NCBI GenBank assembly: GCA_002269645.1
Contig: NIVC01001435.1
Span: 1 to 64,000 of the forward strand
Source of the DNA: Macrostomum lignano
Lineage: Eukaryota
DNA length: 64,000 nt
Direction of reading: 5' to 3'
Below, piece by piece: positions 24,058 to 27,300 of this stretch. How positions within the stretch are numbered: position 1 is the stretch's first letter; each line of letters opens with the position of its first letter. A program made the position numbers and the translations under genes. The notes under the pieces are model-generated. The model saw nothing but the letters and a program-made list of their open reading frames with translations. It was not told where the DNA came from and ran no database searches.

Positions 24058-24319
24058 ATGACGGTCTCCTACAGTGAGACAATCTCCAGCAGCCAGGGCG
24101 GCGTCTTCATCAAGATCCTGCTGCTGTGGAAGGGCAGCCTGTACAAACTGCTGTACACCGATCTCATAGTGTACCTGATAATGTACTACGCATTCAATAT
24201 CATCTACAGGGCCTGCATGGGCCCCGAAGCCAGACAGAGCTTCGAATTGGTGGTGAAATTCTGCGAGGAGATGGACAAGAGCATCCCGCTGTCCTTTATC
24301 CTCGGCTTCTTTGTGGCCG
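24058..24319 (+). CDS. BEST: Bestrophin alternative first coding exon 1A (MTVSYSETISSSQGG...LSFILGFFVAG)
   Basis: ATG at 24058; phase-1 donor G|GTGAGT at 24320. Confidence 0.9.
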
Positions 24320-27300
24320 GTGAGTAGCTGTCTCAATATTGCTAGTCTTCTACTCTCGTCTCTAAGTGTCTTTAACACCCGCGGGTCACAGCGCATCGAT
24401 TTCCACGTGCAGCCTCTAATCAATACGATCTACCGGTGAATAGTGATCAGCAGTGCTTCTGTGAACTTTCAAGTCTTGGAGACTGAGCTGTGGAAAGTAA
24501 AACAAAATGCATAGACGTGCTCATACGCGTTTTAATTGCATCGCATCGCTCTTATGTACGCACGTGACCCCACAAAGCCTGCAGCTGAGTTTCAGGGGTC
24601 AGGAGTACTCAGGAGTGTGAGAACAAACGGAGAGAGGGAGACCAGTTGTAACAAGCACAATAAATTCAAGGCGGTTAGCAGTTGAGGGAAGCCCTGACCT
24701 GAGCTGAATCCCTATTGAGTGCGCCTTATCTCACAGTTGCTATGCGAGGGATTCTCTACTCCATTGTAGTACAGCTCTATTTTGCACAGCGGAGTCAGGA
24801 CCGGTGTGGAATCAATAGAATACCAACTCAAACTCAACAGTGCTTTTCTTGTACGCTCGAAATGGAGCGCGGAAGAGAGAGCGCAAACGGCTGCGGGGAA
24901 GAAATCCCCACTAATCTACCATTCTGGGGTATTGCAAAAAACCCTTAGGTGAGGAGAAGCAGGAAGGTGGAGTGAAAGACAAACACAGCTCAGGTCCTTT
25001 TCTTGAGTCCGCCAGCTAGCAGAGCAGCTTTAGCTACAGCTGGTAGCAACAGCAAGCAAGATGCCACCAGTGCAGGGTTCTTACGCAAGGATTGTGTCCA
25101 CCAACACGAAGTGCGTCTTTGTCAGACTGCTGACAATCTGGCGGGGCAGTCTGTACCGCCTGCTGTACAGGGAGCTGCTTGTCTACCTGTTAATTTACAC
25201 CGCAATCAGCCTGTGCTACCGACTGCAGCTGTCGCCAACAGCCAGGCACACATTTGAGCTGTCGGTTGTCTTCTGCGGCCAGATGGACAAGGGCATACCG
25301 CTGTCTTTTATTCTCGGCTTCTTTGTGGCCGGTGAGGCTGAGGATTCGGGTCTCGGGATTCGGGTCTCGGGATTCGGGTCTCGGGATTCGGGTCTCGGGA
25401 TTCGGGTTTCGGGATTCGGGTCTCGGGATTCGGGTCTCGGGATTCGGGTCTCGGGATTCGGGTATGATAGGATTTGTACTGAGATTTAGTCTCAGTTCTC
25501 GGATTGGAGCAGTGCACTGAGCGGGTCACGAATTCTGCACAGATCGGGGATCAGGGGGCGGGAATTAGTTAGCTGTGAGCATAGTGTCAATGCAGACTAA
25601 TACAGCCTCTGTCGCCTCTCAACATGACGCCACTGAACCGTTAACGCTGCCATCGTGCTCAAGACTGGAGCTGGAGCGGGCACGGTCGCCCATAGCGGCT
25701 GCTGGCCTGAGCTCAATGCCAATTGCCCCGGCCATTCAACATTGATGAGGCATTTGGCACGGCCTAACGCCCTGAATGCTGACCATGCAATAAATTCCCG
25801 TCTGCGTGTCACGCACTCACACGTAGAATTACTCTGATGCACCTGATCCCCTCAGGCCCCTCTCCATCCAGACTCAAAATTCAAGGATGAATTCCTTGTG
25901 ATCTTTCTACGAGGTACTCTTGTCGTACGTTCCTTGCTAGTTTCGCAAAACCAAGTGCTCTAGTGTTTGTAATCCCAACCCGAATCCCAACCCGAATCCC
26001 AACCCGAATCCCAACCCGAATCCCAACCCGAATCCCAACCCGAATCCCAACCCGAATCCCAACCCGAATCCCAACCCGAATCCCAACCCGAATCCCAACC
26101 CGAATCCCAACCCGAATCCCAACCCGAATCCCAACCCGAATCCCAACCCGAATCCCAACCCGAATCCCAACTCGAATCCCAACCCGAATCCCAACCCTAA
26201 TCCCAACCCGAATCCCAACCCGAATCCCAACCCGAATCCCAACTCGAATCCCAACCCGAATCCCAACCAGAATCCCAAAGATTCTGATACCAAATTCTTT
26301 AAGCACTTTAAGCCATATACTAGATAGCAAAATCAATCGCAGATGATCGAATAACTTACAATCCAATGTGCACTCCCACCCGCTCTCTCACCGCAGGCGT
26401 GATCGGCCGCTGGTGGCAGATGTACCTTAACATTCCCTGGCTCAATCGTATATCGTTCTTTGCCTACGGAATTCTCACCGGCACGAAGGACTCGTTTGAG
26501 ACGGCCCGCCGGCTAAGGCTGAGCATCATGCGCTACATGAACCTGGGCTGGATCCTGCTCATGCACTCCATCTCCGAGCAGATCATGCATCGCTTCTCCG
26601 GCCAGGAGGAGGAAGAAGTGAGCAATTCTTTTACTTTTTTAACTGAAACCTCAAGAGTATTTGCTGCGTGTTTTCTCTTTGAAGGATGTTTACTTGATGT
26701 TCGTGCTTTTTAATTAACTCACACCCTGTACTTTCCCAGCCCTTCGCTCCTTCAATCAGTTCACACCCTGTACTTTCCCAGCCCTTCGCTCCATCAATCA
26801 GTTCACACCCTGTACTTTCCCAGCCCTTCGCTCCTTCAATCAGTTCACACCCTGTACTTTCCCAGCCCTTCGCTTCTTCAGTGAGTTCACATCGTGTACT
26901 TTCCCATCCCTTCGCTCCTTCAATCAGGTCGCACCCTGTACTTTCCCATCCCTTCGCTCCTTCAATCAGTTCACACCCTGTACTTTCCCAGCCCTTCGCT
27001 CCTTCAATCAGTTCACACCCTGTACTTTCCCAGCCCTTCGCTCCTTCAATCAGTTCACACCCTGTACTTTCCCAGCCCTTCGCTTCTTCAGTGAGTTCAC
27101 ATCGTGTACTTTCCCATCCCTTCGCTCCTTCAATCAGGTCGCACCCTGTACTTTCCCAGCCCTTACTTCTTAATCCCTCTTGCTGCCCATTGTTTTTCTA
27201 CCATTTAGCCTCATGCGCAAGTCGCCATTGTCTCCATTGTCTGTAGTGACCAGAGCAACTGCAACGAATTACGGAAGACTTTCGTGCTCCCAGAATGCAG

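What the first reader, a model, noticed from the sequence alone, without database searches (positions are those of the whole stretch)
24058..26617. Bestrophin with two tandem paralogous first coding exons feeding one constant region (variable-exon architecture)
Seen: exons 1A (24058-24319) and 1B (25061-25331) each have an ATG, encode the N-terminus, TM1, the outer loop and TM2 up to LSFILGFFVAG, and end in the same phase-1 donor. Only one copy of each downstream exon is present, and both join 26397 in frame. They differ strongly in the N-terminal segment, TM1 and the loop but keep the I-x3-F-x3-F neck. Known: in BEST1 the neck (I76/F80/F84) is the gate, the N-terminal segment contributes to the Ca2+ clasp, and channels are pentamers. 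Inference: one gene makes two subunits with different Ca2+ sensing or trafficking that could form mixed pentamers, a small protocadherin/UGT1-like cassette that I do not know from bestrophins.
Basis: partly seen in the sequence, partly recalled or inferred. Interest (0 to 1): 0.75.

Follow-up and report, generated by a model that had tools for sequence, protein, structure and literature searches.

The report
Flatworm bestrophin with two first exons
A chloride-channel (bestrophin) gene of the flatworm Macrostomum lignano carries a second, unannotated copy of its first coding exon that selection has kept intact, so the gene can probably make two channel subunits; parasitic flukes already show the same trick in public annotations.

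Summary
The window is Macrostomum lignano contig NIVC01001435.1, gene Mlig000907g1. Exons 1A (24058-24319) and 1B (25061-25331) are paralogous first coding exons (55% aa identity). Each has an ATG and a GCCG|GTGAG phase-1 donor that fits the single exon 2 (26397). Every other exon is single-copy.

This is not an assembly artefact: 1B is intact in all three near-identical genomic copies and differs from 1A at 35% of bases. 1A is not a pseudogene remnant: it is the annotated exon.

1B evolved fast, but as coding sequence. Its changes avoid family-conserved positions (p=3e-5). It scores 102 bits against a bestrophin N-terminus profile, against 21±9 for neutrally mutated 1A. It has no frameshift.

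No annotated protein or transcript carries 1B, and two older paralogs lack it, so its expression is unproven.

The architecture is not unique. Schistosoma and Fasciolopsis bestrophin genes have two or three alternative 24-codon first exons. These are annotated as isoforms, and in Schistosoma spliced transcripts support them, each with its own 5' UTR.

Verdict: a real, probably functional alternative first exon; a new member of a known kind; moderate interest.

The parts
23580..24022 (+). Upstream region of exon 1A; putative promoter and 5' UTR (inferred)
   Evidence: No difference among the three genomic copies over about 440 bp, while sequence further upstream differs at about 3%. Function is inferred only.
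24058..24319 (+). Exon 1A, the annotated first coding exon: N-terminus, TM1, loop, and TM2 up to the neck
   Evidence: ATG and GCCG|GTGAG donor in phase 1. Identical to the N-terminus of PAA67970.1/P0013 and of P0133. Pfam PF01062 96.1 bits. 82-84% aa identity to paralogue first exons, omega about 0.1.
24320..25060 (+). 741-bp interval between 1A and 1B. It is intron for 1A transcripts, and would hold a second start site or a trans-splice acceptor for 1B.
   Evidence: 8 differences among the three copies. Role is inferred.
25034..25039 (+). CTACAG, an exact match to the M. lignano trans-splice acceptor motif [T/C]TNCAG, 21 nt upstream of the 1B ATG
   Evidence: Sequence; motif from PMC8629364. 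A chance match within 60 nt has roughly 10% probability, so this is a lead only.
25061..25331 (+). Exon 1B, an unannotated paralogous first coding exon
   Evidence: ATG, 90 codons plus 1 nt, and the same donor. Pfam 81.2 bits. 100% aa identical in copies g3 and g5. Its changes avoid conserved positions. 102.4 bits against 21.3±9.4 for neutral simulations. Keeps all 14 N-terminal columns that are invariant across 39 bestrophins.
25342..25463 (+). Minisatellite GGATTCGGGTCTCG x8.7, starting 10 nt after the 1B donor
   Evidence: In the minimum-energy fold of the intron, 99 of its 122 nt pair with the array at 25971-26278.
25971..26278 (+). Minisatellite AATCCCAACCCG x25.7, complementary core to the array at 25342, ending about 120 nt before the exon 2 acceptor
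   Evidence: Both arrays are present in copies g3 and g5, and the motif occurs nowhere else in the window.
26397..26617 (+). Exon 2, the first constant exon (GVIGRWWQMY...)
   Evidence: Single copy.
31003..31092 (+). Exon 3 (QDMRSRLAYLFDRLRGMNQLSAELRSNSKK)
   Evidence: Present in P0014 and P0133 and in the paralogues. Splice sites.
31464..31796 (+). Exon 4
32733..32921 (+). Exon 5
33598..33705 (+). Exon 6 (GWLKVA...NPFGDDDEDF, the acidic cluster)
35943..36298 (+). Last exon. In this copy it carries a 1-nt deletion in a C run after 35983.
   Evidence: Window reads TTTCCGAGG, copy g5 reads TTTCCCGAGG. P0133 reads ...ITFPEGLSEPSMEW.

Best explanation
Exon 1B is a functional alternative first coding exon of the M. 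lignano bestrophin gene Mlig000907.

Origin. A tandem duplication copied the 87-codon first exon, together with about 20 nt of its 5' flank and its donor site. By synonymous divergence this happened roughly when the three bestrophin paralogues of this clade separated. Copy 1A stayed conservative. Copy 1B changed quickly in the cytosolic N-terminal segment, TM1 and the outer loop. It kept every family-invariant residue and the pore-neck motif.

How it works. Transcripts that begin at 1A splice 24319 to 26397 and remove 1B as intron. Transcripts that acquire a 5' end just upstream of 1B splice 25331 to 26397. That 5' end most likely comes from a second start site in the 741-bp interval, as the schistosome transcripts show for their gene. 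The alternative is spliced-leader trans-splicing at CTACAG|25040. Either way the result is two subunits with the same pore neck, cytosolic body and Ca2+-binding acidic cluster but different N-terminal modules.

Shown: the anatomy, frame compatibility, selective maintenance of 1B, and the precedent in trematodes. Inferred: expression of 1B, the source of its 5' end, mutual exclusivity, and any functional difference or mixed pentamers.
For: - Anatomy and frame.
- 1B is intact and 100% aa identical in three contigs.
- Its substitutions avoid family-conserved positions: 3 of 26 conserved positions changed against 35 of 58 variable ones, p=3e-5. Without the last 17 codons p is still 3e-4.
- Against a profile of 114 non-Macrostomum N-termini, 1A scores 111.8 bits and 1B 102.4. 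Three thousand stop-free neutral derivatives of 1A with the same 88 substitutions score 21.3±9.4, maximum 53.8.
- Only about 9% of such derivatives stay stop-free.
- There is one indel in 252 aligned nt and it is in frame. Non-coding DNA of the three copies shows roughly one indel per three substitutions.
- All 14 invariant N-terminal columns are kept.
- The AlphaFold model of isoform B has pLDDT 83-92 over residues 30-90, and its best PDB matches are BEST1 and BEST2.
- Precedent: S. mansoni, S. haematobium and S. japonicum isoforms differ only in the first 24 residues. The three exon types lie in tandem upstream of one exon 2 in the S. rodhaini locus, each with an ATG and the same donor phase. 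Spliced transcripts L007 and L009 carry 5' UTRs collinear with the DNA just upstream of their own first exon. Fasciolopsis has two such exons.
Against: - No protein among about 15 billion carries 1B. The top hits to an isoform-B query all start with 1A, and nothing is more than 50% identical to 1B alone.
- The GenBank annotation was built from RNA-seq and could keep alternative coding sequences (PMC5730564), yet it has only 1A models for all three copies.
- Nei-Gojobori omega on the 1B branch is about 0.95. On its own this looks neutral, but dS is near saturation under strong GC3 bias.
- Paralogues P0015 and P0016 have no trace of a second first exon.
- Differences among the three copies are too few to show ongoing constraint: 1 synonymous change in 271 nt against a local non-coding rate of 0.7%.
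Confidence: 0.6

Rival explanations
1. 1B is a silent duplicate. It served as coding sequence for a long time, or was copied and decayed slowly, but is not expressed now. The gene makes only the 1A subunit.
For: No annotated or predicted protein carries 1B, and the RNA-seq-based annotation has only 1A. Omega on the 1B branch is about 0.95. 1B is absent from the paralogues. The schistosome array itself contains a dead copy without an ATG (L006 11018), so such exons do die.
Against: The ORF, ATG and donor are intact in three copies. The family profile score is far above neutral expectation, z about 8.6. Substitutions avoid conserved sites. There is no frameshifting indel despite 35% base divergence. 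A recent loss of expression cannot be excluded by sequence.
Confidence: 0.3
2. 1B is an internal cassette exon included after 1A. It would use an acceptor at 25046|25047 or 25052|25053, both of which keep the frame, and would give a protein with a duplicated N-terminal module.
For: 25047-25331 is 285 nt and 25053-25331 is 279 nt, both multiples of 3 with no stop after the phase-1 G of 1A (read).
Against: In-frame length has a 1 in 3 chance, and these AG sites have no pyrimidine tract. 1A ends in the middle of the TM2 helix, so joining it to the cytosolic N-terminus of 1B breaks the bestrophin topology. 1B keeps its own ATG and the 5'-flank similarity to 1A. The motif-like acceptor at 25039|25040 would shift the frame.
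Confidence: 0.04
3. Artefact: an assembly duplication, or 1A (or 1B) as the leftover of a truncated tandem gene or an exon captured from another paralogue.
For: The DV1 assembly is highly redundant, and tandem bestrophin genes are common in flatworms (L008).
Against: 1A and 1B differ at 88 of 252 aligned bases. The same pair is present in three contigs. Exon 2 onwards is as close to the paralogues as 1A is (74-76% against 82-84%), so the constant region belongs with 1A. The nearest relative of 1B anywhere is 1A, at 55% against at most 50% for all else. The two exons share 5'-flank similarity that the paralogues lack.
Confidence: 0.02

Closest known systems
Trematode bestrophin genes with alternative first coding exons: Schistosoma haematobium MS3_00009324 (XP_051065101.1 / XP_051065104.1); S. 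mansoni A0A3Q0KTU6 / A0A5K4EY29 / A0A5K4EX08; S. japonicum KAH8858680-87; Fasciolopsis buski LUCM01008391.1
   Same: Same protein family and the same flatworm clade of bestrophins (GFFV[AS]G-V/I-I-x-RW, IPW[LM]N). They have tandem paralogous first coding exons, each with its own ATG and an identical donor phase, feeding one constant region. In Schistosoma, spliced transcripts show separate 5' UTRs; Fasciolopsis has the tandem exons.
   Different: The trematode variable exon is only 24 codons (the N-terminal segment) in phase 2. The M. lignano exon is 87-90 codons in phase 1 and also swaps TM1, the outer loop and the start of TM2. Intron positions differ, so the duplications are most likely independent. 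The trematode isoforms are annotated; M. lignano 1B is not.
Variable-first-exon / constant-region genes (UGT1A, clustered protocadherins)
   Same: Paralogous first exons in tandem, each carrying the start codon, all spliced to shared downstream exons.
   Different: There are only two exons here. Separate promoters and exclusive choice are not shown. The variable part is a membrane-embedded N-terminal module of a pentameric channel, not a whole extracellular or substrate-binding domain.
Tandemly duplicated mutually exclusive exons of ion-channel genes (an established class; from general knowledge)
   Same: Origin by tandem exon duplication, similar length and the same phase. One copy is conservative and the other fast-evolving.
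   Different: Classical mutually exclusive exons are internal and chosen by splicing alone. Here both copies are first coding exons with their own ATG, so the choice needs a second 5' end (a start site or a spliced leader).
Vertebrate BEST1/BEST2 (PDB 4rdq, 8d1i, 6vx6 and others)
   Same: Same fold (TM-score 0.7-0.8 normalised to the target). The neck I76/F80/F84 and the acidic cluster DDDED are conserved.
   Different: About 30% sequence identity. I found no report of duplicated first exons in vertebrate bestrophins.

Membership tests
Bestrophin (Pfam PF01062) | Significant match to the family profile | tested here: met
   Isoform A scores 285 bits and isoform B 270 bits. Exon 1A alone scores 96.1 and exon 1B alone 81.2, against a cut-off of 24.2.
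Bestrophin (Pfam PF01062) | Bestrophin fold | tested here: met
   AlphaFold model of isoform B: pTM 0.70. Top 22 PDB matches are BEST1/BEST2, E down to 7e-17, TM-score 0.7-0.8 normalised to the target.
Bestrophin (Pfam PF01062) | Hydrophobic neck I76/F80/F84 in TM2 | tested here: met
   IPLSFILGFFVA is present and identical in 1A and 1B. It aligns without gaps to human I76, F80 and F84. PDB 5t5n names these residues.
Bestrophin (Pfam PF01062) | Acidic cluster of the Ca2+ clasp | tested here: met
   NPFGDDDEDF in exon 6.
Bestrophin (Pfam PF01062) | Pentameric Ca2+-activated anion channel | not testable with these tools
   Needs expression and electrophysiology or cryo-EM.
Variable-first-exon / constant-region gene (UGT1A or protocadherin type) | Tandem paralogous first exons, each with its own start codon | tested here: met
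   There are two copies only.
Variable-first-exon / constant-region gene (UGT1A or protocadherin type) | Each variable exon can splice in frame to the same constant exon | tested here: met
   Identical GCCG|GTGAG phase-1 donors, and both coding sequences read through.
Variable-first-exon / constant-region gene (UGT1A or protocadherin type) | Each variable exon has its own promoter or 5' end | not testable with these tools
   No M. lignano transcript data are reachable. The analogous schistosome exons do have their own 5' UTRs.
Variable-first-exon / constant-region gene (UGT1A or protocadherin type) | Both variable exons are expressed, one per transcript | not testable with these tools
   No protein or transcript with 1B exists in the collections.
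Tandemly duplicated mutually exclusive internal exons | Homologous neighbouring exons of similar length and the same phase | tested here: met
   262 and 271 nt, phase 1, 55% aa identity.
Tandemly duplicated mutually exclusive internal exons | Both copies are internal exons chosen by splicing from a common upstream exon | tested here: inconclusive
   Both begin with an ATG, and AG sites lie 10-13 nt (1A) and 21-27 nt (1B) upstream. No upstream exon is annotated or detectable.
Trematode bestrophin first-exon array (orthology with it) | Same exon boundaries and phase | tested here: not met
   Trematodes have 24 codons ending in phase 2, and no intron at codon 87. M. lignano has 87-90 codons in phase 1. 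The arrangement is analogous, not orthologous.

The most novel reading that the evidence does not exclude
Flatworm bestrophins have evolved arrays of alternative first coding exons more than once: M. lignano with 2 x 87-90 codons, and trematodes with 2-3 x 24 codons conserved from Schistosoma to Fasciolopsis. On this reading one gene supplies subunits with different N-terminal modules next to the Ca2+ clasp. In M. lignano the variable module also includes a different TM1 and outer loop. Cell-specific or mixed pentamers with different gating or trafficking would follow. The complementary minisatellites that bracket the 1B-E2 intron might help pair the 1B donor with the exon 2 acceptor.
Probability: 0.3. 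Interest if true: 0.55.

Novelty: new member of a known kind. Interest (0 to 1): 0.4.

Why it matters
If 1B is expressed, M. lignano would offer a natural pair of bestrophin subunits that share the pore neck, cytosolic body and Ca2+ site. They would differ in the N-terminal segment, TM1 and the outer loop. That is a ready-made experiment on what these parts contribute to gating, inactivation, assembly or trafficking, in an animal with transgenesis.

Together with the trematode arrays, it suggests that varying the N-terminus is a recurrent way for flatworms to diversify this channel. The literature I could search does not mention this.

In practical terms, the M. lignano annotation misses a coding exon, and the window copy of the gene carries a probable homopolymer error.

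Tried and rejected
- Assembly duplication: rejected. The exons differ at 35% of bases and the pair is present in three contigs.
- 1A as a pseudogene remnant: rejected. It is the annotated exon, omega is about 0.1, and the constant exons group with it.
- 1B captured from another bestrophin: no better relative than 1A among 1.84 billion representatives.
- Gene conversion as the cause of the conserved 3' end: rejected. 1B is as close to paralogue P0016 (46/54) as to 1A (47/54) there.
- A relic of a second first exon in intron 1 of paralogues L002 and L003: none found with tblastn (E up to 100), blastn-short or a profile search.
- Ongoing constraint measured from the three genomic copies: no power.
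- Pairwise and branch dN/dS: computed, but dS is near saturation under GC3 of 0.74-0.83. I therefore relied on the position-specific and profile tests.
- Transcript evidence: none reachable.
- The first protein search, with 1A plus exon 2, returned only 24 candidates and missed the 100% identical P0013 that one search found. That negative result was therefore ignored.
- O. felineus locus look-up: not on record.
- Literature on alternative first or mutually exclusive exons in bestrophins, and on schistosome bestrophins: nothing relevant.
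Full report
**Identity of the window.** The window is eukaryotic DNA packed with minisatellites. A protein search with a spliced model returned Macrostomum lignano bestrophins as the top hits. The locus fetched for PAA67970.1 (BOX15_Mlig000907g1, P0013) is contig NIVC01001435.1 of GCA_002269645.1. 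Its sequence equals the window base for base, with window coordinate equal to contig coordinate.

**Checking the observation.** Exon 1A runs from 24058 to 24319 and exon 1B from 25061 to 25331. Each starts with ATG and ends ...TTTGTGGCCG|GTGAG after 87 or 90 codons plus one base. The next exon starts at 26397 behind a cag acceptor and completes the split glycine codon, so both joins are in frame.

The two peptides are 55% identical over 84 residues (E=3e-29). Each is by itself a significant Pfam Bestrophin match, at 96.1 and 81.2 bits. DNA similarity ends at the donor and about 20 nt upstream of the ATG. tblastn with arthropod, flatworm and human bestrophins finds no third copy and only one copy of each downstream exon.

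**Full gene model.** The exons are 1A or 1B, then E2 26397-26617, E3 31003-31092, E4 31464-31796, E5 32733-32921, E6 33598-33705, and a last exon from 35943. In this copy the last exon has one C fewer in a C run after 35983 than copy g5. This shifts the frame and explains the truncated GenBank model P0013.

**Not an artefact.** The assembly holds two further near-identical copies of the gene, g3 and g5, on contigs NIVC01000169.1 and NIVC01003188.1. Both contain 1A and 1B with 100% identical peptides. 1A and 1B differ at 88 of 252 aligned bases.

1A is the exon used by every annotated protein (P0013, P0014, P0133, P0134). It is 82-84% identical to the first exons of two older paralogues (P0015 and P0016), with omega about 0.1. 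Exon 2 is 74-76% identical to those paralogues, so the constant region belongs with 1A. The paralogues have a single first exon and no trace of a second one in intron 1. No protein among 1.84 billion representatives is more than 50% identical to 1B, so its nearest relative is 1A next door. The two also share a TAGCA..GCAAGCAA(T/G)ATG flank that the paralogues lack. This points to a local tandem exon duplication.

**Is 1B maintained by selection?** Nei-Gojobori estimates give dS=0.78 and dN=0.40 for 1A against 1B. For 1A against the paralogues they give dS 0.87-1.14 and dN 0.11. A three-taxon split puts nearly all amino-acid change on the 1B branch, where omega is about 0.95. Polarised counts give 24 changes on the 1B branch against 1 on the 1A branch. 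Taken alone this would look neutral. However, synonymous sites are near saturation under strong GC3 bias (0.83 and 0.74), so I used tests that do not depend on dS:

- Positions at least 80% conserved in 114 non-Macrostomum bestrophins changed in 3 of 26 cases. Variable positions changed in 35 of 58 cases (p=3e-5). Without the conserved last 17 codons the p value is still 3e-4.
- A profile built from those 114 N-termini scores 1A at 111.8 bits and 1B at 102.4 bits. Three thousand stop-free sequences made by putting 88 random substitutions into 1A score 21.3±9.4, with a maximum of 53.8.
- Only about 9% of such random derivatives remain stop-free.
- The single indel between the exons is in frame, whereas non-coding DNA of the three copies shows about one indel per three substitutions.
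- 1B keeps all 14 N-terminal columns that are invariant across 39 bestrophins.
- In an AlphaFold model of isoform B the 1B-encoded helices have pLDDT 83-92, and the model matches BEST1/BEST2 structures.
- The conserved 3' end is not explained by gene conversion, since 1B is as close to paralogue P0016 there as it is to 1A.

I conclude that 1B has evolved as a bestrophin coding exon. It changed fast at tolerant positions and was constrained at essential ones. Comparison of the three genomic copies has too little divergence to say whether constraint continues today.

**Is 1B used?** This could not be tested. The GenBank annotation derives from RNA-seq assemblies and removed only alternative transcripts with identical coding sequence (PMC5730564). 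The absence of a 1B model is therefore mild evidence against abundant expression.

As a first exon, 1B needs its own 5' end. There are two routes. The first is a second transcription start in the 741-bp interval between the exons. The second is spliced-leader trans-splicing, which affects about 30% of M. lignano genes and uses the acceptor motif [T/C]TNCAG (PMC8629364). CTACAG at 25034-25039 matches that motif 21 nt before the ATG, though chance alone gives such a match about once in ten. Inclusion of 1B after 1A is possible in frame from two weak AG sites. It would join half of TM2 to a cytosolic N-terminus, so I consider it unlikely.

**Comparison with what is known.** Looking for the duplication in relatives turned up a precedent. 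In the Schistosoma rodhaini locus L006 the short first coding exon (24 codons) occurs four times upstream of a single exon 2. Three intact types (MSISY..., MLSSY..., MPTAY...) each have an ATG and the same ..AA|GTAAGT phase-2 donor. A fourth copy has lost its ATG.

S. mansoni, S. haematobium (one locus tag, MS3_00009324) and S. japonicum (KAH8858680-87) have annotated isoforms that differ only in these 24 residues. Two assembled spliced transcripts, L007 and L009, carry 5' UTRs collinear with the DNA directly upstream of their own first exon, which indicates separate start sites. Fasciolopsis buski has two such exons 34 kb apart before one exon 2. Echinococcus instead has two tandem genes. I found no paper describing this arrangement.

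The trematode exon boundaries differ from those of M. lignano, so the arrangements are analogous rather than orthologous. The M. lignano case is therefore a new, unannotated member of a known kind. It swaps a larger module: the N-terminal segment plus TM1, the loop and the start of TM2.

**Verdict.** The probability that 1B is a functional alternative first exon is about 0.6, and that it is a silent duplicate about 0.3. Functional consequences (Ca2+ sensing, trafficking, mixed pentamers) remain speculation. They rest on general knowledge that the BEST1 N-terminal segment lies at the Ca2+ clasp and that the channel is a pentamer. Interest is moderate.

Noticed in passing
window 35980-35990 and about 36285-36298: The last exon of this gene copy has one C fewer in a C run (TTTCCGAGG against TTTCCCGAGG in copy g5). 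This shifts the frame and yields the truncated GenBank model P0013. A second C-run length difference near the stop changes the C-terminal residues (..SGASIR* against ..SGASIPLTAKA). Homopolymer assembly errors are likely, but a real frameshift in this copy is not excluded.
   Followed up: partly
window 25342-25463 and 25971-26278: The 1B-E2 intron is bracketed by two minisatellites with complementary 10-nt cores (GGATTCGGGT / ACCCGAATCC). In the minimum-energy fold, 99 of 122 nt of the first array pair with the second. Both arrays occur in copies g3 and g5 with different copy numbers, and nowhere else in the 64 kb. They could bring the 1B donor close to the exon 2 acceptor.
   Followed up: partly
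L006 (S. rodhaini OX103915.1) 10001-10072, 11018-11074, 27300-27371, 31449-31520; exon 2 at 39537: Array of alternative 24-codon first coding exons in a schistosome bestrophin gene. Three intact types are used by annotated isoforms in several Schistosoma species, and two of them by spliced transcripts. A fourth copy has lost its ATG. This appears not to be described in the literature.
   Followed up: yes
L010 (Fasciolopsis buski LUCM01008391.1) 10001-10072 and 44185-44256; exon 2 at 53842: Two alternative first coding exons (MSITY... and MTTFY...) lie before one exon 2. The trematode array is therefore older than the schistosome family.
   Followed up: partly
window 31003-31092: A conserved 30-codon exon is present in P0014, P0133 and the paralogues. 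It is absent from the GenBank model P0013 of this very locus, which has 'PQSKSNL' there instead. This is either alternative splicing or a model error.
   Followed up: partly
L003 1145-3731, minus strand: A further, more distant bestrophin paralogue (MTVTYSKVISSGQKG...) lies upstream of the Mlig016709 gene on the opposite strand, with a lipase gene between the two.
   Followed up: no
window 25040-25060 and 24045-24057: If the spliced leader (which ends in ATG) were joined at CTACAG|25040, its ATG would be in frame with the 1B ATG, 21 nt away with no stop between. At the AG sites upstream of 1A it would be out of frame. This may be coincidence.
   Followed up: no
The word-indexed protein search with 1A plus exon 2 returned only 24 candidates. 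It missed the 100% identical M. lignano proteins that the longer query found. Negative results of that tool should not be trusted for short queries.
   Followed up: yes
window about 7100-9000 (+), 54400-55800 (+), 59770-60200 (-), 41270-46017 (-): Neighbouring genes by ORF content or annotation: a FYVE zinc-finger protein with C-terminal NPF motifs (rabenosyn-like), a mitochondrial carrier, a bHLH protein (Max/Mlx-like), and an annotated protein kinase. Every intron and spacer is full of minisatellites.
   Followed up: no
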